Positions 96 to 35,644 are shown, counted from the stretch's first letter. The stretch: DNA of 64,000 nt from Botryllus schlosseri (GCA_051294905.1 CM119379.1:18290001-18354000); one strand, 5' to 3'. The notes: a model not told the origin generated them from the letters alone. A program made the numbers and translations.

Positions 96-813
96 TATAC
101 CCTAAATTTCGTCATCAGCACAACACCGATGGGCGAAAGCCAAGTTTGTGGTTCGAAATATTATGAAAAATTTACGACTGCTCCAAAGCCGAAATACCGA
201 AACATGACGACGATAATGAATATTGGCCTTGTGTAAAATGACCAAGGTTGTCGAATGAAACGAAATCAATATCAATACCAACAACGGCGTCAATAAGCTA
301 TATAACATTACTCAGGGGTAGTTTCCGAAGATTCTTCAGAAAGGTAGGCCTATATATAAGGCCCTTACGCAGCATTGGTTATTCGATGTGCTTTCATGAA
401 ACAGTGCGGAGTGGTTTCGCGATGTGTTTAACACAAGGCGACGAAGTTTTATACCGTACCAAGCTTAGCGAAGGATCTGCCACGGCTCGGATTTCGTGCT
501 AACACGTCGACGTAACATAGAGCTGAAGGGTCGGAGTTTCTCATTTACCTGTTTAAACGGTTTTTGCCATGTTTATTATGTTGACTTCCTGCGTATTCGA
601 AAAATTAAACATTTGCAACGCAGATGATACGGGTGTACGTTCTATTGTTAATCCCATTGTGTTTAATTCAACTCTCATTCAATGTATTAAAAGCATAAAA
701 AAACAAATGAAACGAAACATGAGTGCTACGAACAATGTGCAAAATTAAACAATAACGAATGGACTTAAAAACGAATGCAATTGAGTAATTCAATTGTTAT
801 AAAGATTGGCGTT

Positions 814-1110
814 TCACTGAAATATCGTCAGTTTTGTCTTGCGTTTTCGGCCGACATGTCCTGGTTTCTTTCCCGCATTTTTCTCAGGGACTGTTACCAG
901 CAATTTTCCATCGGATGATATCTGGCTTTTGTAATGACGCATGATACGCTCTGATAGGAATCTATCGAAGATCAATCTCCTGTCTTGTTCAGGTTTATCA
1001 TTCCATTCATGCAGGTCCATTTCATACTTTGAAAATCCCCCCTTAAGGCGATACAATCCAGTTTTATAAAGTAATCGTTGAAGGTCAATGAACATGAACA
1101 TGCTTGTCAC
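814..1110 (-). pseudogene. C-terminal remnant of a transposon-type protein (possibly MULE-like transposase tail)
   Basis: ORF ...DLQRLLYKTGLYRL...HEWNDKPEQDRRLIFDRFL...SSDGKLLVTVPEKNAGKKPGHVGRKRKT. It ends in a basic tail and resembles C-termini I recall from invertebrate transposase-like proteins (not verified by search). It lies between inverted minisatellite arms. Confidence 0.35.
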
Positions 1111-1554
1111 TGAGCTATATTCTATTCATGACATACCAATCAAAGTAATACACCCTTCTTCTGGTGCACCAGTATCGAAATATTGTCTTTGGAGTGTGCA
1201 TTATATTAATTAGATACGTATAAGGCCCGTGTAGTGAATAATAGGCCTCCATACCTGCAGTCGCACACGTCCGATATCAGATCAGTGAATATCTATGATA
1301 GGCAGAGCCGTTAGTAGGGAAAGCCTATACGCTACATCCACGGAATCGCACAGGTGTTAGTCAATATTATAACAAATATGTATTTACAGCTGCATAATTA
1401 TTCGTAAGCAGAGCTTTTAATACAAAGTAACGATTTTTTTTTTGATCCCGTGTGGATGTCAGAATATCTGTTCACCGCCCGTACACTGAAAATCACGAAG
1501 ATAGTCCTTGCATGCCGTGTAATGAATGAATCTGAATCCGGAAGTGCTCCGGAG

Positions 1555-3060
1555 CTGATAGCTGCGCTTTATTTCAATTCAGACGAACTCCGGAGCTGAT
1601 AGCTGCGCACTATTTCAACTCAGACTTGCTCCAGATCTGATAGCTGCGCACTATTTCAACCAGGACGTGCTCCAGAACTGATAGCTGCGCACTATTTCAA
1701 CCCGGACGTGCTACGGAGCTGATAGCTGCGCACCATTTCAACTAGGACGTGCTCCAGATCTGATAGCTGCGCACTATTTCAACTCAGACTTGCTCCAGAT
1801 CTGATAGCTGCGCACTATTTCATCTCAGACTTGCTCCAGATCTGATAGCTGCGCACTATTTCAACTCAGACTTGCTCCAGATCTGATAGCTGCGCACTAT
1901 TTCAACCCGGACGTGCTACGGAGCTGATAGCTGCGCACCATTTCAACTAGGACGTGCTCCAGATCTGATAGCTGCGCACTATTTCAACTCAGACTTGCTC
2001 CAGATCTGATAGCTGCGCACTATTTCATCTCAGACTTGCTCCAGATCTGATAGCTGCGCACTATTTCAACTCAGACTTGCTCCAGATCTGATAGCTGCGC
2101 ACTATTTCAACCAGGACGTGCTCCAGAACTGATAGCTGCGCACTATTTCAACCCAGACGTGCTCCGGAGCTGATAGCTGCGCACTATTTCAACTCAGACT
2201 TGCTCCAGATCTGATAGCTGCGCACTATTTCAACCAGGACGTGCTCCAGAACTGATAGCTGCGCACTATTTCAACCCAGACGTGCTCCGGAGCTGATAGC
2301 TGCGCACTATTTCAACCCAGACAAGCTCCAGCGCTGATAGCTGCGCCCTAAACGATACGTGACCTTTAAATTACCTGTATGTCTGCGGTTTTTCGTGATA
2401 GATGTGATAGCTGAGTATATCCACAGTAGTGATAGCTGCGCACTATTTCAACTCGGACGTACTCCGGAGCTGATAGCTGCGCACTATTTCCACTCAGACT
2501 TGCTCCGGATGTGATAGCTGCGCACTATTTCAACCTGGACGTGCTCCGGATCTGATAGCTGCGCACTATTTCAACCCAGACGAGCTCCAGCGCTGATAGC
2601 TGCGCCCTAAACGATACATGACCTTTAAATGACCTGTATGTCTGCGATTTTTGGTGATAGATGTGATAGCTGTGATAGCTGAGTATATCCACAGTAGCGA
2701 TAGTGATAGCTGCGCACTATTTCAACCCGGACGTACTCCGGGGCTGATAGCTGCGCACTATTTCAACCAGGAAGTGCTCCGAATCTGATAGCTGCGCACT
2801 ATTTCCACTCAGAGTTGCTTCGGATCTGATAGCTGCGCACTATTTCAACTCAGACGTGCTCCGGATATGATAGCTGCGCACTATTTCATTCCAGACAAGC
2901 TCCAGCGCTGATAGCTGCGCCCTAGACGATACGTGACCTTTAAATGACCTCTATGTCTGCGATTTTTGGTGATAGCTGCGATAGCTGTGATAGCTGAGTA
3001 TATCCACAAGTGATAGCTGCGATAGCTGCGGGAGCTGTGATAGCTGAGTATATCCACGGG
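1555..3060 (+). repeat. 41-bp minisatellite array (~31 units) in three blocks separated by a ~95-110-bp spacer
   Basis: Core ctgatagctgcgcactatttc recurs every 41 bp (1555, 1596, 1637 ... 2334; 20 units). The spacer ccctaaacgatacgtgacctttaaat...gagtatatccaca follows at ~2346, ~2605 and ~2920. Confidence 0.95.
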
Positions 3061-3509
3061 GCCGGGCAATCCGCTAATTTTACGTCATATCAATTCGGTA
3101 TTCCTTATGATCGAACCGGTTAAATTTGAATGATATATATAACGGTATGGCGCACGACCGGGTAAGCCGGTACATTATACGGCGGTGATTATATGCCGTT
3201 AACCAAAATCCGTGCCTAACGCTGCCGTATCCGTGGCGGTAGCGCGGACTTCAAGTTGATACACGTGCGTAACTAGGAAATCCAAAATACAATCCATTAG
3301 GTCTTCTTGTATACTCTCCAAACCTTAATAGACGAACGTTTTGTTAATAAACTATTTCATATTCATGTAATAACCCAAAGGATCGGTCATGGTTCAATGA
3401 TGTGACACGCAAGAAATCACATACCACCGGTGCCCGGCGGGAGTCGGGAAACCGGAGAGCCAAACTATGGGGGGAATCCCCGTCGTTTGATTTGCAGATT
3501 CTCATTCTC

Positions 3510-4301
3510 ACCACTGTGATTCTGCCAGAAAATGCTTACGTCATACTTCCGAAATTGCTGCGTCATTGTTGTCGCAATGATTCACTTGTGCTAAAATCAA
3601 ATATTATAACCGGAAAAACAATTTCGCGACAGATTTGGAGTGCAAACGAGCTGAAACACACGAGTTTTATCATTAAATGGCGCAAACGGTATGATCAATA
3701 CAATATGTAATCGAAACTTGAAGGAGTGCTTCATTTTACAACCGCCAGGTAGTACTTATGGCATCTAAATTTTCAGCCGTTACGTAATATACGCAGGCGG
3801 AGCTATCTCGATTCTCGCCTGTAGCCGAAGCATCAGAGGTTAATTTGTGTTCCTTCCCCCATGTGTGACTATTTCTTGCGGCGGCGAGAGGCCCGGAAAA
3901 AGACTCCACAAATGATTATACGTGATATCGAGGAGAAAAAAAGTAAAAATAATAATATTTAACGAAGACATCCTATCCAACACTGTCATAGGCTATATCG
4001 GCCAATTGGCTCAAGTCGTTTTTGATTAAAATACCATAATACAGGTAAATGCAACATCTTCCTGCCGGTCACCTGCATCGCATTGCACACTATGTGTCTT
4101 GAGCACATCAGAAAATAAATGCTTACGATTATTGCGATTCACGTCATGTTCGTGTTTAGTATAAGTCGACAGTAATACAGTATTTTATGAATTATTCAAT
4201 AAACAGTTAAAACAAAAAAGCAACGGCATTTCTTCTGCTTCGAACATTTTATATATTCGGAAAACTATTTCATCGTGGTTTTACGACGCCTACTTTTTTA
4301 A
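3510..4301 (+). repeat. Left outer (unique) inverted arm
   Basis: Reverse complement of ~12360-12910, apart from two segments present only on the left. Confidence 0.9.
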
Positions 4302-6000
4302 GATCAAAATGCATGATATTGCGTCAAATACGACTTTTCGTCAACTTTGATTTTCGGTCAGTTTCAATCAACAATTAGGACACCCAAAATGTAACGGCGT
4401 GCTCTCTGCTTTGGATATGTTATATATTTGGATAAGTGTTACATCATGATATTAACGATAATATCAAAAAGTTGAGAAATTGTGTACTTTTTGAGGATCA
4501 AAATGCATGATTTTGCGTCAAATGCGACTTTGCGTCCAATTCGATTTCCGGACAGTTTCAATCGATAATTAGGACACCCAAAATGTAACGGCGTGCCCTC
4601 TTCTTCGGATATGTTATATATCTGGATAAGTATTACATCATGATATTAACGATAATATCAAAAAGTTGAGAAATTGCGTACTTTTTGAGGATCGAAATGC
4701 ATGATTTTACGTCAAATACGACATCTCGTCCAATTCGATTTTCGGTCAGTTTCAATCGACAATTAGGACACCCAAAATATAACGGCGTGCCCTCTTCCTT
4801 GGATATGTTATATATATGGATAGGTATTACATCATGATATCAACGATAATATCAAAAAGTTGAGAAATTGTGTACTTTTTGAGGATCAAAATGCATAATT
4901 TTGCGTCAAATGCGACTTTGCGTCCAATTCGATTTTCGGACAGTTTCAATCGATAATTAGGACACCCAAAATGTAACGGCGTGCCCGCTGCTTCGGATAT
5001 GTTATATATCTGGATAGGTATTACATCATGATATTAACGATAATATCAAAAACTTGGGAAATTGTGTACTTTTTGAGGATCAAAATGCATGATTTTGCGT
5101 CAAATGCGACTTTGCGTCCAATTCGATTTTCGGACAGTTTCAATCGATAATTAGGACACCCAAAATGTAACGGCGTGCCCGCTGCTTCGGATATGTTATA
5201 TATCTGGATAGTTATTACATCATGATATTAACGATAATATCAAAAAGTTGAGAAATTGCGTACTTTTTGAGGATCAAAATGCATGATTTTGCGTCAAATA
5301 CGACATCTCGTTCAGTTCGATTTTCGGTCAGTTTCAATCGACAATTAGGACACTCAAAATATAACGGCGTGCCCTCTTCTTTGGATATGTTATATATCTG
5401 GATAGGTATTACATCATGATATTAACGATAATATCAAAAAGTTGAGAAATTGCGTACTTTTTGAGGATCAAAATGCATGATTTTGCGTCAAATATGACTT
5501 TTCGTCCAATTGGATTTTTGATCAGTTTCAATCAACAATTACGACACCCAAAATGTAACGGCGTGCTCTCTGCTTTGGATATGTTATAAATTTGGATAAG
5601 TATTACATTATGGTATTAACGATAATATCAAAAAGTTGAGAAATTGTGTACTTTTTGAGGATCAAAATGCATGATTTTGCGTCAAATGCGACTTTGCGTC
5701 CAATTCGATTTTCGGACAGTTTCAATCGATAATTAGGACACCCAAAATGTAACGGCGTGCCCGCTGCTTCGGATATGTTATATATCTGGATAAGTATTAC
5801 ATCATGATGTTAACGATAATATCAAAAAGTTGAGAAATTGCGTACTTTTTGAGGATCAAAATGCATGATTTTGCGTCAAATATGACTTTTCGTCAAATTC
5901 GATTTTTGATCAGTTTCAATCGACAATTAGGACACTCAAAGTATAGCGGCGTGCCCTCTGCTTTGGATATGTTATGTATTCGAACTAAAAGTTAGTCATG
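4302..6000 (+). repeat. 194-bp tandem array, ~9 units (left arm)
   Basis: gatcaaaatgc recurs at 4302, 4496, 4690, 4884, 5078, 5272, 5466, 5660 and 5854 (period 194). Confidence 0.97.
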
Positions 6001-6347
6001 ATATCAATGATCAGACAATACACACTGCGCCACTCGCATCCCCAATTTCCAAGTATGAAGTTGCCTGTAGACCATAGTTGTGTAAAATATGACTTCACGT
6101 AGAATTCGATTCCTGGTCAATTACTGTTTTACCATGCTGTCCTGTCCTGCTTTGTCATCTTCGTCCCTAATTTTTCTCAGCAACTCCCCTCGAATCAATG
6201 AGTTTCAGACGAATTAATATGCAGATTGAAAATGTGATTTCGAAACGTGCATTTTGTAAAGAACACTCGATGTAGATATAGGATTCTAGACAGGGACGTT
6301 TTGGAGAAAAAACGAATTATTTGAATTCATGCAGCATATCATTCCAA

Positions 6348-9300
6348 TTAATCCAATGAAAACCCAAAGTCTTTTGATATTGAATTGTAGTCCTGATTTT
6401 TCAGTGCCATTGCGAAAAATATCATTCCTTCAAAATGCAGCACTTCGTTTACATATTCTGGGAAATTTCGTTTTTTGTCTTTAAAACTATTAAGCAAAGC
6501 GTTCCCAAACACCTCAGGATTCGGATAAACGACTAAACTGTCTTTTGAGCTGTATAGGGACAATTTCCCGCTCATGTGCTTGAAATATTTAACGGTTCTA
6601 GTTCTAAGGCAAAATTTCGATTTAATGAATTTCAATAAATATTCCAGATGCGTTTCCGTAGTTTCGCTTTCGGCATATTTCAGAGTCGAATTGAATTTTT
6701 TCAGGGATTTTAGTTGTCCTTTCACGAACAGAGAAAGTCGATACCATTCTGCTTTCGTATTTCCATTTTTCATTGACGAGGTGGTAAGTTTTTTCAAATT
6801 GTTTAACATAGAATTCAACTGCATGATAGATGTTCCTGTCCATGTCATATTGTTGAGATTGTTTCCATACCGTGGAACATACGGCACATCTTTCTTTTTC
6901 TCCACAATTGTGCATGTGCCCAAATTAGGCGGCATGCGGCGACGAGGAATTTGCTTTGATCTTGCGTCCTTGATCGTCTCACCAGTTTTTACGTACATCA
7001 GGATTGTAGCATTTTGTTGCGTGTCAAATATTAGCCGATCAGTATTTACCACACGTAATGCGTCGTCGTCAAATACTGTGCAGAATCCATCATGATTGCC
7101 GGTATATGCGAGATAGTGCACCGATGCACACGACGTACCATGATGGATTACTTTCCCTTATAGTGTATAATGGGATTTCAATCCTTCTACTTCGATATCC
7201 ATTGAATCGGGTATCTGGACTGAGGTGATGTTTTTACCCTCTGGAGTTCCGCGACTGACATTTATCACCAGCATGTTGGGAAGGGTTCCGAATACGACAT
7301 GTTCGTCTACATCAGCGTGGCATTGTAGGGATCTGCTGTTAGTATTAACACATTGACGAGGAAAATTTGTGATCAGGTCAGAAATATCACTGTTTTCTTC
7401 AAATGTATGTAAAACAACGGATAGCCGATGTTCTATGAATTTCGAGGGAAATTGCAACGCTTGCAATTGACTTTGCGAATCAATCGAAATTTGGAAGTAA
7501 CCCCCATCTGCTCCATCGCATCGCTCAAGTCCGTATCGAGAATTCTGGTGATGAACTCTCCGGCATCTTGCTGCGTGCCACAATCCCATCCAAACTTTGA
7601 ACATATATCTGATACCAATTTTTCAATGTCAGATACGATGCACTGTTTGCGGCTATCTAAAGTCAATTGCATAATTAATTGCATGAAATCAGAGGTTATG
7701 GATGCGTACCGATATGGCCTTTCAGACATAATGCCAAGCATTGGGTGGTAGCATTGAACCAACAAGAATTCCCAATATTAGGCATACCTTTGGTGCAGGT
7801 CTTAGGGCAAAACGTATTGACAGCGATGTGTCTAATATCGCGGTGAACAGAATGTGACTGACTGACGACTTGAAAACATATCCATATCGGTACATGGTCA
7901 AAACTTTGCTGACATCGGTACCTTCAGAAGGTTGGTCGAGTCCGAAACAAACCCGATCCGCGACAACGCAAACGCAAACGCCGCAGCTCTCAAGATCTGG
8001 CTGCTTAATCGGACATTTTCGTGAAAACGAAACGACCTCGCACTTGGTTAATTTTTGCAGCTCGGGCATTAAATATTCGTTAATAGCCCGGTTAAGACCT
8101 TCGTTCACGTGGTCAATGGAGTCGTATAATGTAATAGTATTGTCATATGAATCAAATACAATCAGCTAGAAATGCCTTTCCCAAACTAATGGATAAAGTC
8201 GCGTCATGATAGCACATGACTTAACATCTGAAGCAGCATTCACTGTAGATAAGCTGGAGCTACGATTTGGAGATCTGAATCCTTTTCCCTGAAGAATCTC
8301 TCTGGTGTTGTCTGGATCAATGCATTCAAAAGCCTTCGACTCATTTTGCTGCGTGGCCAAGGACGCCGATCTTTTAATATAGCAGTATACAACATCCGAC
8401 GTCAGCCAGCCAAGAGGGTGGGATTTCTCAATTTCGTGAAAACTTACGATCGATTCACACATTGAAAGCGGTATGAGAGATTTCAAATCGACCCACAGCA
8501 GAAATGAATCACGTAAATATTGCACAGCAGTGTCAAACATTTGCTCGATTCGATCAAAGTTAGACATATTTTTCCAGATTGCCGTTACCATACCATCACA
8601 TTTTTGGAAGTCCAAAGTAGACCAAGGGTACGGTACTTTTGTTATTTGTGGCAAATCCAATGTAAATGGTACCAAATTGCGTTCTGAAGAGATCGGAGGG
8701 GATGATGGGGCTTGATCCGTCAGATCTATCGTTTCCGAGCAATTCAAGGCAACAGTTTTTGTTGTACGCTGATTGGCGTATTTGATTGTGCTCTTGATGA
8801 TGTTAATCCGATCGCTCGAATAGCATCCTTTACCGCGTGACTTCTTTCGTTTAAACTTTGATTGTACTGTTTTCGAAGTCTTTGATACGGACTGATCACT
8901 TAATTTGTATAAGAATGTTGCCAAATATCCATTTCGATAAAGTGCGTCGAAGAATTTTTTTTCTTGAATCTAAATTGAACGTTTATATTTGACAACGAAA
9001 CTATCCAAACGGTTTGCTCTTTCTTTCCTCGGTATAACATTTTTTAGGAAATCAAAGCTTTGCTCGACGCATCCCTGAGTTCTATTGTCAATTGTGATAT
9101 TGCGGTACCTGGACTTGGCTATCCGTCGGTAATTGTTCGAAAATCCGTTGTACATTTCGGTTTGATTAGCCGTTGAGAAATTGTTACAATGCCGGCTCAG
9201 ATCTCCAATCATTAATTCGGAAGTCGTTGGGATTTTACTTAAAACAAATTTTACAACGATGTCGCAAAAATTGCCATCGTTGTGTACATTCAACTGGCGT

Positions 9301-9556
9301 GACGATCCAGCAAGTTCTGATGAATGGGCTATGTAGTCCTGCGATTCCCGGAATGCTGCCGTCATAGTCCCATACCTGTGACGAAATGGTGATCGGAGCT
9401 CATGATACTCATCTTGCTTTTAAGATTCAATCAAAATAGTCTCGCTAGAGTCTGAGTGTGCGAAGTCTCTCGGGAACGAATCTATTCCATCTACATTGCT
9501 TCCATCTTCTTTCATTATATGGTCGAAATGATCATCAACAAAAGTTGACGAATACC
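6348..9556 (-). pseudogene. Disrupted polyprotein: transposase-like tail + Ulp1/SENP (C48) protease + USP (C19) deubiquitinase + C-terminal domain of unknown function
   Basis: One frame runs from ~9555 to ~7880 through stops at 9420, 8970 and 8166. It includes RTQGCVEQSFDFLKN, GWLTSDVVYCYI, RHF*LIVFDSYDNTITLYDS and KQPDLESCG. After frameshifts come GMPNIGNSCWFN, QQDAGEF, LPNMLVINVSR, YTL*GKVIHHGTSCASVHYLAY, FDD and ATILMYVK. Confidence 0.85.
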
Positions 9557-9667
9557 TGTAAAATATGAATATATATTCGAAGATACCATCACTGAATGAC
9601 ACATCATTTTACGCACCATATATGTAGGAATATGGGAGCACATATATGTGGAGGCTTGTGTAACTCA

Positions 9668-12360
9668 TCGTTAATATCATGATGTAATACCTATCCAGAT
9701 ATATAACATATCCAAAGAAGAGGGCACGCCGTTATATTTTGGGTGTCCTAATTGTCGATTGAAACTGACCGAAAATCGAATTGGACGAGATGTCGTATTT
9801 GACGCAAAATCATGCATTTCGATCCTCAAAAAGTACGCAATTTCTCAACTTTTTGATATTATCGTTGATATCATGATGTAATACTTATCCAAATATATAA
9901 CATATCCAAAGCAGAGAGCACGCCGTTACATTTTGGGTGTCCTAATTGTTGATTGAAACTGACCGAAAATCGAATTGGACGAAAAGTCATATTTGACGCA
10001 AAATCATGCATTTTGATCCTCAAAAAGTACGCAATATCTAAACTTTTTGATATTATCCTTAATATCATGATGTAATAGGTATCCAGATATATAACACATC
10101 CAAAGCAGAGGGCACGCCGTTACATTTTGGGTGTCCTAATTGTCGATTGAAACTGACCGAAAATCGAACTGGACGAGATGTCGTATTTAACGCAAAATCA
10201 TGTATTTCGATCCTCAAAAAGTACGCAATTTCTCAACTTTTTGATATTATCGTTAATATCATGATGTAATACTTATCCAGATATATAACATATCCAAGGA
10301 AGAGGGCACGCCGTTACATTTTGGGTGTCCTAATTGTCGATTGAAACTGATCAAAAATCGAATTGGATGAAAAGTCATATTTGACGCAAAATCATGCATT
10401 TCGATCCTCAAAAAGTACGCAATTTCTCAACTTTTTGATATTATCGTTGATATCATGATGTAATACTTATCCAAATATATAACATATCCAAAGCAGAGAG
10501 CACGCCGTTACATTTTGGGTGTCCTAATTGTTGATTGAAACTGACCGAAAATCGAATTGGACGAAAAGTCATATTTGACGCAAAATCATGCATTTTGATC
10601 CTCAAAAAGTACGCAATATCTAAACTTTTTGATATTATCGTTGATATCATGATGTAATACTTATCCAAATATATAACATATCCAAAGCAGAGAGCACGCC
10701 GTTACATTTTGGGTGTCCTAATTGTTGATTGAAACTGACCGAAAATCGAATTGGACGAAAAGTCATATTTGACGCAAAATCATGCATTTTGATCCTCAAA
10801 AAGTACGCAATATCTAAACTTTTTGATATTATCCTTAATATCATGATGTAATAGGTATCCAGATATATAACACATCCAAAGCAGAGGGCACGCCGTTACA
10901 TTTTGGGTGTCCTAATTGTCGATTGAAACTGACCGAAAATCGAACTGGACGAGATGTCGTATTTAACGCAAAATCATGTATTTCGATCCTCAAAAAGTAC
11001 GCAATTTCTCAACTTTTTGATATTATCGTTAATATCATGATGTAATACTTATCCAGATATATAACATATCCGAAGCAGAGGGCACGCCGTTACATTTTGG
11101 GTGTCCTAATTGTCGATTGAAACTGATCAAAAATCGAATTGGATGAAAAGTCATATTTCACGCAAAATCATGCATTTCGATCCTCAAAAAGTACGCAATT
11201 TCTCAACTTTTTGATATTATCGTTGATATCATGATGTAATACTTATCCAAATATATAACATATCCAAAGCAGAGAGCACGCCGTTACATTTTGGGTGTCC
11301 TAATTGTTGATTGAAACTGACCGAAAATCGAATTGGACGAAAAGTCATATTTGACGCAAAATCATGCATTTTGATCCTCAAAAAGTACGCAATATCTAAA
11401 CTTTTTGATATTATCCTTAATATCATGATGTAATAGGTATCCAGATATATAACACATCCAAAGCAGAGGGCACGCCGTTACATTTTGGGTGTCCTAATTG
11501 TCGATTGAAACTGACCGAAAATCGAACTGGACGAGATGTCGTATTTAACGCAAAATCATGTATTTCGATCCTCAAAAAGTACGCAATTTCTCAACTTTTT
11601 GATATTATCGTTAATATCATGATGTAATACTTATCCAGATATATAACATATCCAAGGAAGAGGGCACGCCGTTATATTTTGGGTGTCCTAATTGTCGATT
11701 GAAACTGACCGAAAATCGAATTGGACGAGATGTCGTATCTGACGCAAAATCATGCATTTCGATCCTCAAAAAGTACGCAATTTCTCAACTTTTTGATATT
11801 ATCGTTAATATCATGATGTAATACTTATCCAGATATATAACATATCCGAAGCAGAGGGCACGCCGTTACATTTTGGGTGTCCTAATATTCGATTGAAACT
11901 GACCGAAAATCGAATTGGACGAAATGTCGTATTTGACGCAAAATCGTGCGTTTTGATCTTAAAAAAAGGACGCAATTTCTCAACTTTTTGATATTATCCC
12001 TAATATCATGATGTAATAGGTATCCAGATATATAACATATCCAAAGCAGAGGGCACGCCGTTACATTTTGGGTGTCCTAATTGTCGATTGAAACTGATCA
12101 AAAATCGAATTGGACGAAAAGTCATATTTCACGCAAAATCATGCATTTCGATCCTCAAAAAGTACGCAATTTCTCAACTTTTTGATATTATCCCTAATAT
12201 CATGCTGTAATAGGTATCCAGATATATAACATATCCAAAGAAGAGGGCACGCGGTTACATTTTAGCTGTCCTAATTGTCGATTGAAACTGTCCGAAAATC
12301 GAATTGGACGAATAGTCGTATTTGAAGCAAAATCGTGCGTTTTGATCTTAAAAAAGTAGG
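9668..12360 (-). repeat. 194-bp tandem array, ~14 units (right arm, inverted relative to the left array)
   Basis: Units start at 9673, 9867, 10061, 10255, 10449, 10643, 10837, 11031, 11225, 11419, 11613, 11807, 12002 and 12196, and are the reverse complement of the left array unit. Confidence 0.97.
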
Positions 12361-12910
12361 CGTCGTAAAACCACGATGAAATAGTTTTTCGAATATATAA
12401 AAGCAGAAGAAACGCCGTTGCTTTTTTGTTTTAACTGTTTATTGAATAATTCATAAAATACTGTATTACTGTCGACCTATACTAAACACGAACATGACGT
12501 GAATTTTTACTTTTTTTCTCCGCGATATCACGTACACTCATTTGTGGAGTCTTTTTCCGAGGGGAAGGAACACAAATTAACCTCTGATGCTTCGGCTACA
12601 GGCGAGAATCGATGTAGATCCGCCTGCGTAGATCACGTAACGGCTGAAAATTTAGATGCCATAAGTACTATCTGGCGGTTGTAAAATGAAGCACTCCTTC
12701 AAGTTTCGATTACATATTGTATTGATCATACCGTTTGCGCCATTTATTGATAAAACTCGTGTGTTTCAGTTCGTTTGCACTCCAAATCTGTCGCGAAATT
12801 GTTTTTCCGGGTATAATATTTGATTTTAGCACAAGTGAATCATTGCGACAATAATGACTCGGCGATATCGGAAATATGACGTAAGCATTTTCTGGCAGAA
12901 TCACAGTGGT
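12361..12910 (-). repeat. Right outer (unique) inverted arm
   Basis: Reverse complement of 3510-4301. It lacks left-arm segments ~3860-3893 and 3951-4138. Confidence 0.9.
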
Positions 12911-14221
12911 TCATTCTCCGTTACGATCATGCGACGTGCGTGGTTCCCGTTCGCCTATGTTGCGATTCGAGATTAGTTTTGATTTGACTAATATTGTCAA
13001 CTGATGAGGTAAATTGCTCCAAAGAATTGAGTTGTATATTATATTATGTACTTAAACCAGGATTATTTCGCTCAAGTGAATACCAGGCCTGTTTTTTGTT
13101 GCTTCAATTTGTTAATTTTCCTGCCGTTGGTGTGTTGTGGTTATCTGTATATACCGTTGGAGGTTCGAGTTTGATTGATTCGTTACTCCAACTCATTCAT
13201 GGTATCGCGACCTTGTGGTGCGTGGAAACTGATGAAAATATTGATTATGAAATGAATATAAATGAAAAAATGGTCATATGCCTTAGGCTATTGATAGAAT
13301 AACTTGAATCAAAATTTAAATTTTATCTTGTTTTATTTGAGCAAAAAGCTACATATAATTTAGAAATATTATGTCAATGGCATAATGGAAGAAACTTTCA
13401 ATTTTTTAATCACCAATATTTTGATACAATGAAAAGACAGCAAGAACACGTAAATGAGCAGCATGCTCATTGCTCAACAGTGTTGTGGCTTGTGGTCAAG
13501 TCACTATTGTCGAGTCACAAAAACTTTAAAATTGGCTGGAGTCGAGTCAAGTGAGTCACTTTTAGGTCTACTCTACGCTGACCGCGACTCTCAGGCCAAT
13601 TCTGCCTATTTGTGACATTTTGTATATAAGCATTAAACTCCAGCGTGCATATATATCAAGTTTCATGGAGAACACAGTTGATGATCATGGGGAATGCTGT
13701 TTAAGTGTTTATTAGCTGTCATTGGGAGTATTGGTATTGGTAATCAATACGCGTCAAGTCAATAGTGTATCAATACTCAATAGTGCATCAAATGTACAGC
13801 AGTGCTGCAATGGTCTTACATACTGTAACTCTGTAACAATGTCGATTATCGGCTTTAAGATTGATTACGATATATTATGATTTACATTAAGGCCCGGTTT
13901 TATAAAATTTTATGCTCGGGTCACCAGATTTGAAAGATCACATATTATTATCAGAGACGGAGAGATTTATTTTGTCAACCGATAACGCGAAAAAATAGAA
14001 GACGTATCGGTGTATAAATATGCAGTATCCAACGTTGGTATTGACTGGTGTACCAGTGATACGATCATGACGATCTTCATGTCAACTGGAACCAGAGTGT
14101 ACGGTTAGCCTATTCAAAGAAAATAATTTCATAAACTAAAAATGATTCAACGATATATAATCAATTGTTTTATTTTTTAAAATGGTGTAGATATATTATA
14201 GTCGAATATCCTAGTGCGAGA

Positions 14222-14888: not shown

Positions 14889-15044
14889 ACATTATCACCG
14901 ATTTCTTGATATTAGAATGATTCAAACTATTCTTTGAATGAATTATTGTATCTTTTACCAAGACGATGTAACAGCAGTACAATTTCTTATTTACAAATTG
15001 CGCCATTTCTCTTTTTAATAGGACTTGAGAAACTGTGAAGTGTG

Positions 15045-16895
15045 ATGCGTTGCGTGATCCTCGTTGCGGGCCACGGGGCTAGGCTGGAGGAAGACATAAA
15101 ACATGATACATCTGGGAAGTACAGCTCGTTGATCGGAATTCCGAAAGCTCTTCTGCCGGGTGTTGATGGAAGGAAAATAATGGATTATTGGTGGAAAATC
15201 ACGAATGTACGTCAAATCTTCAGTGACGTGTACCTTGTCACTAATGCCGCGAAGTACAAGCACTTTGAACGATGGGCTACTGCGAATGATTTTCCTGTAG
15301 CAAATATCATCAACGACGGGTCGACAACAAAAGATACAATGCTTGGTGCGGTGGGAGATTTTGATCTGGCTCTGCGGAATAAAAACGTTGACGATGATGT
15401 TGTTGTCGTTGCTGGCGACATGCTGTTTGAAGATCAAAATTTCGATATCTCGCAAGTTGTGCGATATTTTCGGCACAAAGCCGGGGATTTAGCGATCTAT
15501 TATGAGATGGATAGCAGCGAGCCGTCTACTTCTCGTGGCATTGTGGAGGTCGATTTTGCCACAAACAAAATCACAAAATTCTACGAGAAACCAAATCCAG
15601 GAGTCACAGAATCGAGACTTGCTAGCGTAGTGTTCTATTGCTTCCGTCAAAGTACGTTAAAGACCGTCCGTACGTATTTAGAGAGCCCACAATGCGGGCG
15701 TGCACCAAATTTTGGAAAATACATGGAGTGGCTTATAAATATCAAAAAAATTGATGTGTACGGTATGAAGTTGCCAACAAGATTCCAGCTCATTGGCGAA
15801 GTCACGTTGGCAGATTACCAAATGAGGTTGGATTACTTCGGTAAAATGAAAGAACTGAGTGCCAGGCAAAAACTGATAACCAACCGCGCCTACGCTAGAG
15901 TCGGACTCATGGGTAATCCTAGCGATGGATTTTACGGAAAAACCATTTCCCTCTCGATTTCAAACTTCTGGGCCGACGTGACGATAATGGAAAGCGAGAA
16001 ATTGGTGTTGACGCCGCATCCGCTTAACGACCCGACCACGTTTGGAAGCCTGCACGATCTCCATGGAATAAGCCGTAAAGAAGGATACCTCGGCGGGCTG
16101 CGCCTCTTGCAAGCTACTTGCAAGAAGTTCTATGAATTTTGCAACGAAAGAGGAATAGCCCTATACAAGAAAAATTTCACTTTGAGCTACGACACGAATA
16201 TACCCCGTCAAGTCGGTCTCGCTGGTAGTAGCGCGATTGTGTCGGCTACACTGAAATGCCTGGTGCAGTTTTTCAACCTGAACGAGTCCGACTTGCCAAA
16301 GCCGCTCCGTGCCACTTTTATTCTGAACGTCGAAACTGACGAGTTATTCATCAATGCCGGATTGCAGGATCGCGTGATACAAGTATATGAGGGCCTGATG
16401 TACATGGATTTCCGAAGAGAGTTACTCGAGGATAAGGGTTACGGGGAATATGAACGCCTCAGCGCCGAAGATCTGCCGCAAATATGGCTCGCATATCTCG
16501 CCGATCCGAGTGATTCCGGAAGGATTCACAGCACTGTCCGGCAACGGTTTGATGCCGGAGACGAAGACGTTCGAAAAGCTATGGTGAGATTCGCAAAATA
16601 TACGGATGACGCGAAAGAGGCGATCGTTGAGAGAAACTGGACGCAGCTAGCGTCGCTCATGAACGATAACTTTAATTTGCGCAAGGAAATCTACACCGAA
16701 GAGTGTATCGGCGAAATGAACATGGAAATGGTTAAGATAGCAAGGCGATATGGATCGAGCGCAAAATTTTCCGGTAGCGGTGGCGCTGTGATCGGGATTT
16801 GTTTTGACCGAGAAAAATTGGCAGCGTTGAAACTTGATATGCAGTCGCAGGACTTTGTTATATGTGATATAGTGCCGAATCTTCCGTCTGAGTAG
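15045..16895 (+). CDS. gkup: Bifunctional glucuronokinase / putative UDP-sugar pyrophosphorylase (nucleotidyltransferase-GHMP kinase fusion), 616 aa, intronless
   Basis: N-terminal ILVAGHGARL...PKALLP...VVVAGDML are sugar-nucleotidyltransferase motifs. C-terminal AYARVGLMGNPSDGFYGKTIS, PRQVGLAGSSA and KFSGSGG match glucuronokinase-type GHMP kinases. Confidence 0.88.
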   Translation: MRCVILVAGHGARLEEDIKHDTSGKYSSLIGIPKALLPGVDGRKIMDYWWKITNVRQIFSDVYLVTNAAKYKHFERWATANDFPVANIINDGSTTKDTMLGAVGDFDLALRNKNVDDDVVVVAGDMLFEDQNFDISQVVRYFRHKAGDLAIYYEMDSSEPSTSRGIVEVDFATNKITKFYEKPNPGVTESRLASVVFYCFRQSTLKTVRTYLESPQCGRAPNFGKYMEWLINIKKIDVYGMKLPTRFQLIGEVTLADYQMRLDYFGKMKELSARQKLITNRAYARVGLMGNPSDGFYGKTISLSISNFWADVTIMESEKLVLTPHPLNDPTTFGSLHDLHGISRKEGYLGGLRLLQATCKKFYEFCNERGIALYKKNFTLSYDTNIPRQVGLAGSSAIVSATLKCLVQFFNLNESDLPKPLRATFILNVETDELFINAGLQDRVIQVYEGLMYMDFRRELLEDKGYGEYERLSAEDLPQIWLAYLADPSDSGRIHSTVRQRFDAGDEDVRKAMVRFAKYTDDAKEAIVERNWTQLASLMNDNFNLRKEIYTEECIGEMNMEMVKIARRYGSSAKFSGSGGAVIGICFDREKLAALKLDMQSQDFVICDIVPNLPSE

Positions 16896-17535: not shown

Positions 17536-35644
<18,109 letters not shown>

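What the first reader, a model, noticed from the sequence alone, without database searches (positions are those of the whole stretch)
3510..12910. 9.4-kb foldback transposon with kb-long satellite-containing inverted arms and an exact 8-bp TSD
Seen: 36-bp perfect terminal inversion, ~2.5-kb and ~3.2-kb inverted arms made mostly of 194-bp arrays, TSD tcattctc on both sides, and a ~3.6-kb coding core. Established: Zisupton elements combine 8-bp TSDs, terminal AT-rich minisatellites and a SUMO-protease domain, and some MULEs have long TIRs and carry Ulp1 proteases. Inference: this is a member or relative of one of these groups. Arms this long could form large hairpins and could seed a satellite family.
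Basis: partly seen in the sequence, partly recalled or inferred. Interest (0 to 1): 0.8.

Follow-up and report, generated by a model that had tools for sequence, protein, structure and literature searches.

The report
Defective foldback Mutator-type transposon copy
This is a real 9.4-kb jumping gene of the already described Foldback/NOF/Rehavkus branch of Mutator transposons, with long inverted arms made of a 194-bp repeat. This copy has lost the front half of its transposase gene and the rest has decayed, so it is a clear but ordinary example.

Summary
Window 3510-12910 is bounded by a perfect 36-bp terminal inversion and an exact 8-bp duplication, TCATTCTC. Its inverted arms (2.5 and 3.2 kb) are mostly 194-bp tandem units, 8.8 and 13.8 copies.

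The 3.65-kb core is not an intact gene. It is one decayed minus-strand reading frame with 4 in-frame stops and 3 frameshifts. It aligns with the C-terminal ~900 residues of 1,700-2,070-aa proteins from marine metagenomes, whose order is PHD finger, transposase, Ulp1-like protease, USP protease.

A predicted structure of the relatives' transposase region matches the Drosophila NOF-FB protein best (E 1e-22). FAR1/FHY3, ZSWIM and IS256 transposases follow. The family therefore belongs to the Mutator superfamily (NOF/Rehavkus-like), not Zisupton.

The window copy keeps only the catalytic-E segment. It lacks the PHD finger and both catalytic aspartates, so it is non-autonomous.

Public contigs show a high-copy family: other copies end at exactly 3510 with different flanks, including in a second species label.

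Two relatives with intact genes carry 5-kb arrays of 176- and 186-bp units upstream.

Foldback elements with satellite-filled arms are described in beetles and flies. This scan already reported the same kind elsewhere in this genome. Verdict: new member of a known kind, low interest.

The parts
3502..3509 (.). Left target-site duplication TCATTCTC
   Evidence: Read directly; identical to 12911-12918.
3510..3545 (+). Left terminal inverted repeat, perfect 36-bp terminus
   Evidence: 0 mismatches, 0 expected by chance; contigs of other copies have loose ends exactly at 3510.
3510..4290 (+). Left outer (non-array) domain of the arm. 3510-3859 matches the right end at 96%. It holds two segments (about 35 bp and about 170 bp) that the right arm lacks.
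   Evidence: I25, I17; read side by side.
4291..6011 (+). Left array of the 194-bp unit, 8.8 copies; the innermost unit is cut at monomer position 160
6012..9666 (.). Middle domain (core), not repeated in the arms
6351..9608 (-). Decayed, 5'-truncated reading frame. In-frame stops at 9422-9420, 8972-8970, 8168-8166 and 7160-7158. Frame changes within 7947-7875, 7700-7675 and 7454-7433. Terminal stop at 6350-6348.
   Evidence: Colinear with P0002 residues 1162-2045 (E 4e-42), P0003 and P0004.
8973..9551 (-). Remnant of the C-terminal part of the transposase. It includes the conserved motif DNRTQGCVEQSF (9089-9054), which aligns with the family's invariant Glu (P0002 E1327).
   Evidence: E 3e-21 to P0002 1207-1357; invariant D986, D1060, E1327 in the family.
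7947..8624 (-). Ulp1/SENP-like (C48-like) protease region. His codon 8174-8172 is followed two codons later by a stop (8168-8166). The Q..C motif KQPDLESCGVCVC has its Cys codon at 7985-7983.
   Evidence: the nine best PDB matches of the family profile are all SENP8/1/5/2, E 0.01-0.05. SENP1 E 0.26.
6954..7800 (-). USP/UCH-type (C19) protease region spread over three frames: Cys box GMPNIGNSCWFNA (7788-7750), QQDAGEF box, His box VHYLAY (His codon 7118-7116)
   Evidence: Relatives hit Pfam UCH at E 1e-19 to 3e-20.
6351..6953 (-). C-terminal tail after the USP domain, conserved with P0004 up to its end
   Evidence: P0004 1549-1896 vs 7358-6366, E 2e-9.
9667..12358 (-). Right array of the 194-bp unit, 13.8 copies. 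The innermost unit is cut at monomer position 160. Three blocks share 100% identical monomers (9827=10409=11185; 10021=10797=11379).
12359..12910 (-). Right outer domain of the arm, with the perfect 36-bp terminus at 12875-12910
12911..12918 (.). Right target-site duplication TCATTCTC
   Evidence: Read directly.

Best explanation
Window 3510-12910 is a non-autonomous, internally deleted and decayed copy of a foldback-type cut-and-paste DNA transposon. It belongs to the NOF/Rehavkus-like branch of the Mutator superfamily.

Intact relatives encode one long protein: PHD finger, DDE transposase, Ulp1-like protease, USP protease.

In this copy a deletion next to the inner edge of the right arm removed the promoter side, the PHD finger and the part of the transposase with both catalytic aspartates. 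What remains (the segment with the catalytic Glu, the Ulp1-like region, the USP region and the tail) has since gained 4 stops and 3 frameshifts.

Inferred: the element moved, and could only move again, if a transposase from an intact sister copy acted in trans. That enzyme would bind the termini and probably the subterminal or array repeats, pair the two ends, excise the element and insert it at a cut staggered by 8 bp. Repair of that cut gave the TCATTCTC duplication.

The arm arrays change in place by unequal exchange or slippage. This explains the 8.8 versus 13.8 units and the 100% identical blocks in the right arm.
For: Shown:
- Perfect 36-bp termini, 350-bp ends at 96% and an exact 8-bp duplication.
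- Inverted 194-bp arrays whose inner edges fall in the same monomer phase.
- The ORF remnant is colinear with P0002 1162-2045, P0003 951-1568 and P0004 702-1896. Homology always starts at window 9551-9575.
- Nothing matching the N-terminal 700-1,160 residues occurs anywhere in the 64-kb window.
- In the family, D986, D1060 and E1327 are invariant. The window keeps only the E segment.
- An AlphaFold model of the family's transposase region (pLDDT 74) matches NOF-FB protein P16320 best (E 1.1e-22, TM 0.55). K. lactis alpha3, FAR1/FHY3/FRS, ZSWIM3/9 and IS256-family transposases follow. The best solved structure is the IS256-family ISCth4 transposase.
- The PHD finger is found in 5 of 6 relatives, UCH in 3 of 6 and C48 in 1 of 6.
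- Relatives with intact genes have arrays of a 176-bp unit (at least 5.6 kb) and a 186-bp unit (5.3 kb) upstream of the gene.
- Public contigs: summed depth over 3510-4290 is 50- to 1,000-fold that of the flank. Contigs from other copies break exactly at 3510 with differing flanks in three runs.
- Right-arm monomers include 100% identical blocks.

From the literature:
- Rehavkus elements have a PHD finger, minisatellites and long TIRs (PMC6446971). They are described as foldback elements with subterminal tandem repeats (bioRxiv 10.1101/2024.12.02.626372).
- Muta1 makes 8- or 9-bp duplications (PMC5225508).
Against: - The duplication is 8 bp, whereas Rehavkus is tabulated with 9 bp (PMC6446971). 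Only this one copy's duplication was seen.
- Pfam's MULE model hits a relative only at E 0.048. Superfamily placement therefore rests on a predicted structure of a 26-30% identical relative and on motif layout, not on the window's own sequence.
- No intact sister copy from this genome was examined here; earlier scan notes report them, but I did not see their sequences.
- Transposase binding to the 194-bp units is inferred. The unit sequences of the three relatives share nothing significant.
Confidence: 0.84

Rival explanations
1. The element is a Zisupton (KDZ-type) transposon: 8-bp duplication, terminal minisatellites and a SUMO-protease domain.
Against: No KDZ family was hit in any of six full-length relatives at E up to 1. 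The relatives' transposase region folds like NOF, FAR1 and IS256 transposases. A PHD finger and a USP domain are present in the relatives; my recollection, not checked here, is that neither is described for Zisupton.
Confidence: 0.02
2. The arms belong to an unrelated 8-bp-duplication superfamily (hAT or P). On this view the NOF-like gene fragment in the core is captured or nested foreign DNA, not the remnant of the element's own transposase.
For: hAT and P elements typically make 8-bp duplications (established knowledge). The copy has no catalytic core of its own. P element and Hermes transposases appear as weaker fold matches (E 3e-5 to 4e-4).
Against: Two distant relatives with intact genes show the same pairing of gene and adjacent kb-long arrays of 176-186-bp units, so gene and arms travel together. 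No second set of termini or duplications lies inside the core. MULEs also give 8-bp duplications (PMC5225508, PMC4079207, PMC3169594).
Confidence: 0.05
3. This is not a decayed by-product but one member of a protease-only sublineage. On this view a deletion derivative keeping the Ulp1-like and USP modules amplified as such, perhaps because the proteases help mobilisation in trans.
For: Exact 31-mers of the core are widely held: 0.26-0.46 in many samples, 0.34 and 0.32 in two other species labels, and 0.36 in a probable RNA run. So this form of the core, or parts of it, is not unique to this locus.
Against: This copy has 4 stops and 3 frameshifts, including a stop two codons after the Ulp1-like catalytic His and one just before the USP His box. 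The shared 31-mers could equally come from full-length copies. No breakpoint-spanning evidence was obtained.
Confidence: 0.08
4. The structure is an assembly artefact or a non-transposon inverted duplication.
For: Long inverted arrays are hard to assemble. No single public contig spans the stretch that was laid.
Against: The exact 8-bp duplication directly abuts perfect termini. An independent contig runs from the flank into the terminus (3320-3537, 28 nt inside). Several contigs from other loci and runs break exactly at 3510.
Confidence: 0.01

Closest known systems
Rehavkus elements (Repbase; treated as the sister or outgroup of MULEs in PMC6446971; foldback elements with subterminal satellites in Tribolium, bioRxiv 10.1101/2024.12.02.626372)
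   Same: Long inverted termini that hold variable numbers of tandem repeats; a single long ORF with a PHD finger in the relatives; Mutator-type DDE fold; arm repeat numbers that differ between ends and copies.
   Different: Rehavkus is tabulated with a 9-bp duplication and reported from arthropods and annelids; here the duplication is 8 bp and the host is a marine invertebrate (a sea squirt according to earlier scan notes). The relatives add Ulp1-like and USP domains, which the papers I could read do not describe for Rehavkus. Direct sequence comparison with Repbase Rehavkus was not possible.
FB-NOF of Drosophila melanogaster (Foldback arms plus the NOF 120.7-kDa protein, P16320)
   Same: Best structural match of the family's transposase region (E 1.1e-22, TM 0.55). 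Arms built of tandem repeats. Most copies lack a working coding region.
   Different: Only 15% sequence identity. Recalled, not checked here: FB arms use much shorter repeat units (tens of bp) and FB makes 9-bp duplications. NOF is 1,056 aa, whereas the relatives here are 1,700-2,070 aa and carry two protease domains after the transposase.
Tetris foldback transposon of Drosophila virilis (PMC4079207)
   Same: Non-autonomous foldback element. TIRs have an outer domain, a variable number of ~220-bp tandem repeats and an inner domain. Duplications are 8-10 bp. The arm repeats are a source of satellite DNA.
   Different: Tetris has no coding remnant and its transposase is unknown. Here a transposase remnant ties the element to a NOF-like family.
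Muta1 (Aedes aegypti), an experimentally active animal MULE classed as a type 2 Foldback element (PMC5225508)
   Same: 8- or 9-bp duplications; subterminal tandem repeats in long TIRs; many non-autonomous derivatives that share only the ends.
   Different: Muta1 is 3.2 kb, with 145-bp TIRs, 12-bp repeats and a 504-aa transposase without PHD or protease domains.
Zisupton (KDZ superfamily)
   Different: The transposase type differs: no KDZ family was hit and the fold is Mutator/IS256-like.

Membership tests
Mutator superfamily (MULE, including NOF/Rehavkus) | DDE transposase with the Mutator/IS256-type fold | tested here: met
   Met for the family, not for this copy. The model of P0002:780-1400 matches NOF (E 1.1e-22), alpha3, FAR1/FHY3/FRS, ZSWIM3/9 and IS256-family transposases, and ISCth4 in the PDB. 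Pfam MULE alone is weak (E 0.048). The window holds only the segment around the catalytic Glu.
Mutator superfamily (MULE, including NOF/Rehavkus) | Target-site duplication of 8-11 bp | tested here: met
   8 bp exact. Range from PMC6446971; 8 or 9 bp shown experimentally for Muta1 (PMC5225508).
Mutator superfamily (MULE, including NOF/Rehavkus) | Long terminal inverted repeats (often hundreds of bp) | tested here: met
   350-bp ends at 96%, and whole arms of 2.5 and 3.2 kb.
Rehavkus | PHD finger in the transposase protein | tested here: inconclusive
   Present in 5 of 6 full-length relatives and in P0020. The corresponding region is deleted from the window copy.
Rehavkus | Tandem (mini)satellite repeats in or next to the inverted termini | tested here: met
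   194-bp arrays in both arms. 176- and 186-bp arrays next to the genes of relatives.
Rehavkus | 9-bp target-site duplication (Table 1 of PMC6446971) | tested here: not met
   8 bp here, and no 9-bp reading fits. Only one copy was seen; related foldback MULEs vary between 8 and 10 bp (PMC4079207, PMC3169594).
Rehavkus | Sequence similarity to the Repbase Rehavkus transposases | not testable with these tools
Foldback (FB-type) elements | Arms made largely of tandem repeats in inverted orientation around a middle domain; arm lengths vary | tested here: met
   61% of the element is arm; 8.8 versus 13.8 units.
Zisupton / KDZ | KDZ-type transposase | tested here: not met
   No KDZ family among the Pfam hits of six relatives at E up to 1. 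The fold is Mutator/IS256-like.
hAT | hAT transposase with C-terminal dimerisation domain | tested here: not met
   No hAT family hit. Hermes is only a weak, lower-ranked fold match (E 4e-4, TM 0.19).
Autonomous transposon | Intact open reading frame with the complete DDE triad | tested here: not met
   4 in-frame stops and 3 frameshifts. The region with D986 and D1060 is absent.

The most novel reading that the evidence does not exclude
The nucleosome-length unit of the arm arrays (194 bp here; 176 and 186 bp in two distant relatives; 195 and 163 bp reported for other elements in earlier notes on this genome) may be a selected trait of this transposase family. On this reading the arrays would position nucleosomes, which the enzyme reads with its PHD finger and edits with its SUMO-type and ubiquitin-type proteases, to open its own ends for excision or to escape silencing.

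A second uncommon reading is also not excluded. Near-identical core 31-mers under three species labels could reflect recent horizontal transfer rather than close kinship.
Probability: 0.1. Interest if true: 0.65.

Novelty: new member of a known kind. Interest (0 to 1): 0.25.

Why it matters
As a single locus it matters little. It is a dead copy of a transposon kind already described in flies and beetles, and this scan already reported the kind elsewhere in the same genome.

It is useful as a clean annotated example:
- exact termini and duplication;
- arm arrays with the same inner phase in both arms;
- recent in-place expansion of one arm;
- a mapped deletion that turned an autonomous element into a non-autonomous one.

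It also extends a little-studied family to marine invertebrates. In that family a Mutator-type transposase is fused to a PHD finger and two ubiquitin-like-modifier proteases, and the element carries kilobase arrays of ~180-195-bp units. This is relevant to how transposons seed satellite DNA and cause inversions. The function of the protease modules has, as far as I could find, not been tested.

Tried and rejected
- Pfam on the window's ORF pieces gave only sub-threshold UCH hits and noise.
- PDB sequence searches with single pieces gave SENP1 at E 0.26 and nothing else useful.
- The ESM Atlas search of the 267-aa piece scored below the level at which hits mean anything.
- The exhaustive HMMER search with that piece found only two weak hits. 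One (P0001) is a low-complexity false positive. The other (P0002) opened the family.
- I suspected a shared motif (TTTGCGT..AAATA.CGAC) between the 194-bp unit and the 176-bp unit of L002. Comparison of the consensus units gave only chance-level 8-9-mers, so I dropped it.
- CGTCA motifs all point one way in the arms (24 vs 0). That mostly follows from the repeat itself and is not evidence of a binding site.
- I tried to find both ends and a duplication for the relative on L001. It holds two small palindromic elements but no clear termini or duplication.
- L002 and L003 end about 1 kb after the gene, so their second arm and duplication could not be read.
- Literature searches for a described Ulp1 + USP transposase fusion found nothing relevant in the open-access library.
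- The search of earlier findings by sequence returned nothing.


Full report
**1. Observation**

The element spans window 3510-12910.

- The 36-bp terminus occurs exactly twice in the window, in inverted orientation, at 3510-3545 and 12875-12910. It has no mismatch, and none is expected by chance.
- The inverted match extends over 350 bp at 96% (I25).
- The octamer TCATTCTC directly abuts both termini, at 3502-3509 and 12911-12918. A 9-bp reading does not fit.
- Tandem Repeats Finder gives a 194-bp unit at 4291-5979 (8.7 copies) and 9667-12358 (13.9 copies). The two arrays are inverted relative to each other at 88-94%.
- Mapping the unit consensus back shows that both arrays end at monomer position 160 at their inner edge, at 6011 and 9667. 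The inverted symmetry therefore covers the whole arms: 2,502 and 3,244 bp around a 3,655-bp core.
- Nothing else in the 64-kb window resembles the element.

**2. The core**

On the minus strand almost all long open stretches lie in one frame.

- They are interrupted by in-frame stops at 9422-9420, 8972-8970, 8168-8166 and 7160-7158.
- The frame changes three times, within 7947-7875, 7700-7675 and 7454-7433.
- These gaps are too short to be introns, and the stops lie inside conserved domains. The core is therefore a pseudogene.
- Recognisable motifs are a Ulp1-type set, a USP Cys box, a QQD box and a His box.
- The Ulp1-type set reads GWLTSDVVYCY, then HF-stop-LIVFDSYDNTITLYDS, then KQPDLESCGVCVC.
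- The USP motifs read GMPNIGNSCWFNA (Cys box), QQDAGEF (QQD box) and VHYLAY (His box).
- Pfam sees only sub-threshold UCH matches in the pieces.

**3. Relatives**

- An exhaustive HMMER search with the 267-aa piece found P0002, a 2,074-aa protein on a Tara metagenome contig.
- BLASTP and TBLASTN show that the window's frame is colinear with P0002 residues 1162-2045 (E 4e-42). It is also colinear with P0003 (1,735 aa), P0004 (1,905 aa) and others at 25-30% identity.
- The C-terminal tail after the USP domain is conserved up to the stop at 6350-6348.
- Among six full-length relatives, five have a PHD finger, three hit Pfam UCH (E about 1e-20) and one hits Peptidase_C48.
- A profile of the region that aligns with the window's Ulp1-like part finds only SENP8, SENP1, SENP5 and SENP2 as its nine best PDB matches, over the catalytic segment. 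The E-values are marginal, 0.01-0.05. The C48-like assignment is therefore probable, not proven.
- Members named by a source come from a sea cucumber (P0005) and from the sea squirt Styela clava (P0020).

**4. Superfamily**

- The family alignment has invariant D986, D1060 and E1327 in P0002 numbering. They sit in the motifs LDATGS, IDGSxA and TQGIIEQHF, with an HxCxxH-like motif after the second Asp.
- Pfam MULE hits only at E 0.048.
- I therefore modelled P0002:780-1400 with a 21-sequence alignment (mean pLDDT 74, pTM 0.65).
- Against Swiss-Prot models the best match is the 120.7-kDa NOF-FB protein of Drosophila (E 1.1e-22, TM 0.55 over nearly the whole model).
- The following matches are all known Mutator-derived or Mutator-related proteins: K. 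lactis alpha3, eleven FAR1/FHY3/FRS proteins, ZSWIM3/9 and a dozen IS256-family transposases.
- Among solved structures the IS256-family ISCth4 transposase ranks first, ahead of the P element and Hermes transposases.
- No KDZ (Zisupton) or hAT family was hit.
- The family therefore belongs to the Mutator superfamily and is closest to NOF.

**5. What this copy lacks**

- Homology to every relative begins at window 9551-9575, which corresponds to P0002 residue about 1162. That point lies after both catalytic Asp residues and before the Glu, which the window retains in DNRTQGCVEQSF (9089-9054).
- Only about 100 bp separate this point from the inner edge of the right array.
- TBLASTN of all relatives against the whole window finds no trace of the N-terminal part.
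- The copy is thus an internal deletion derivative and cannot supply its own transposase.

**6. Family layout elsewhere**

- The contigs with the intact genes of P0003 and P0004 carry, upstream of the gene, at least 5.6 kb of a 176-bp unit and 5.3 kb of a 186-bp unit. Both contigs stop about 1 kb after the gene.
- The pairing of this gene with kilobase arrays of ~180-195-bp units therefore recurs in distant relatives. This argues that the arms and the gene remnant in the window belong together.
- The unit sequences themselves are unrelated.

**7. Copies in public data**

Contigs of four runs were laid on 2930-4290.

- The single-copy flank has depth 9-11 in the likely source sample. Summed depth over 3510-4290 is 460-12,000.
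- Contigs with unrelated upstream sequence break exactly at 3510 in runs X1 and X5, and in X6, which carries another species label.
- A 355-nt contig of X6 matches 3510-3864 with 8 differences.
- A contig of X1 runs from the flank into the terminus (3320-3537). With 28 nt inside, it falls just under the tool's 31-nt bridging rule.
- A contig of another individual (X8) covers 3369-3509 and then continues with 11 letters unlike the element. This may be the empty site, but the letters were not shown.
- Exact 31-mers of the core are held at 0.26-0.46 by many samples of the same species. They are held at 0.34 and 0.32 by two other species labels, at 0.30 by a marine metagenome and at 0.36 by a probable RNA run.
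- The family is therefore abundant and recently active. Whether the cross-label sharing means close kinship or transfer cannot be told with coded names.

**8. Arm dynamics**

- Monomers of the two arms intermix in identity, with means of 90% within the left arm, 93% within the right arm and 91% between arms.
- The right arm contains three blocks whose monomers are 100% identical (9827=10409=11185; 10021=10797=11379).
- The extra five units of the right arm thus arose by recent duplication of blocks of 3-4 units. This is the kind of in-place expansion reported for foldback arm repeats in Tribolium and D. virilis (bioRxiv 10.1101/2024.12.02.626372; PMC4079207).

**9. Comparison with what is known**

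- Rehavkus is described as a MULE-related group with a PHD finger, a single ORF, TIRs of 26-400 bp, a minisatellite and 9-bp duplications (PMC6446971).
- It is also described as a foldback transposon with variable subterminal tandem repeats and inverted termini that can exceed 11 kb (bioRxiv 10.1101/2024.12.02.626372).
- Tetris has ~220-bp arm repeats and 8-10-bp duplications (PMC4079207). Tm1 has 8-10 bp (PMC3169594). Muta1 makes 8 or 9 bp in yeast (PMC5225508).
- The 8-bp duplication here departs from the tabulated Rehavkus value but lies within the Mutator range.
- I therefore file the element as a member of the Mutator superfamily of the foldback NOF/Rehavkus kind, without claiming strict Rehavkus membership.

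**10. Earlier scan notes**

- After my first look, notes from this scan pointed to NOF/Rehavkus elements with PHD-transposase-Ulp1-USP proteins in the same genome.
- Later notes pointed to foldback elements with 195-bp arm arrays and to another copy that lost the front of its transposase.
- I used these as leads and tested the classification independently, as described above.
- The scan has therefore found this kind before on other DNA of this genome.

**11. Verdict**

The element is a new member of a known kind and of low interest as a single locus.

Noticed in passing
window 1544-3060: A 41-bp tandem satellite (33.7 copies, 79% matches) lies directly left of the insertion. In public contigs its right end (2930-3067) has summed depth of 5,000-44,000 against 9-11 for the neighbouring unique flank. 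It is also present under a second species label, so it is a major satellite of this genome.
   Followed up: partly
window 15042-16895 (+): An uninterrupted 617-aa ORF with nucleotidyl-transferase plus GHMP-kinase N and C domains (Pfam E 2e-11, 8e-8, 3e-7), in a stretch of raised G+C (0.44-0.49). An intronless, bacterial-looking sugar-activation fusion in an animal genome could be a horizontally acquired gene or contamination-like cargo.
   Followed up: no
window 28222-30123 (+): A 633-aa open reading frame without any Pfam match at E 0.01.
   Followed up: no
P0006 versus P0002/P0003/P0004 and the window: The order of the two protease domains differs within the family. P0006 has transposase, then USP (1058-1368), then C48 (1645-1822). 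The others and the window have the Ulp1-like region before the USP domain. The modules were therefore shuffled or acquired twice.
   Followed up: partly
L003 58-184 and 784-910: Telomere-like TTAGGG-type repeats in inverted orientation lie near the end of the 3.5-Mb contig that carries the relative P0004, about 2 kb outside its 186-bp array.
   Followed up: no
L001 33-2209 and 11272-11728: Two small palindromic elements flank the P0002 gene: a 2.2-kb element with 59-nt inverted ends, and a 457-bp hairpin. Both contain a CAGTGTTGCCA motif, loosely similar to the window terminus CACTGTGATTCTGCCAGA. No clear duplication was found.
   Followed up: partly
window 3860-3894 and about 3950-4130: The left arm's outer domain has two segments that the right arm lacks. 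Public contigs of other copies often end or skip here (ends at 3864; a joint 3920 to 3989), so this is a variable spot among copies.
   Followed up: partly
window 6012-9666 in runs X6, X12, X14: About a third of the core's exact 31-mers are held by runs labelled as two other species and by a marine metagenome. This means either very close relatives or recent spread between species.
   Followed up: no
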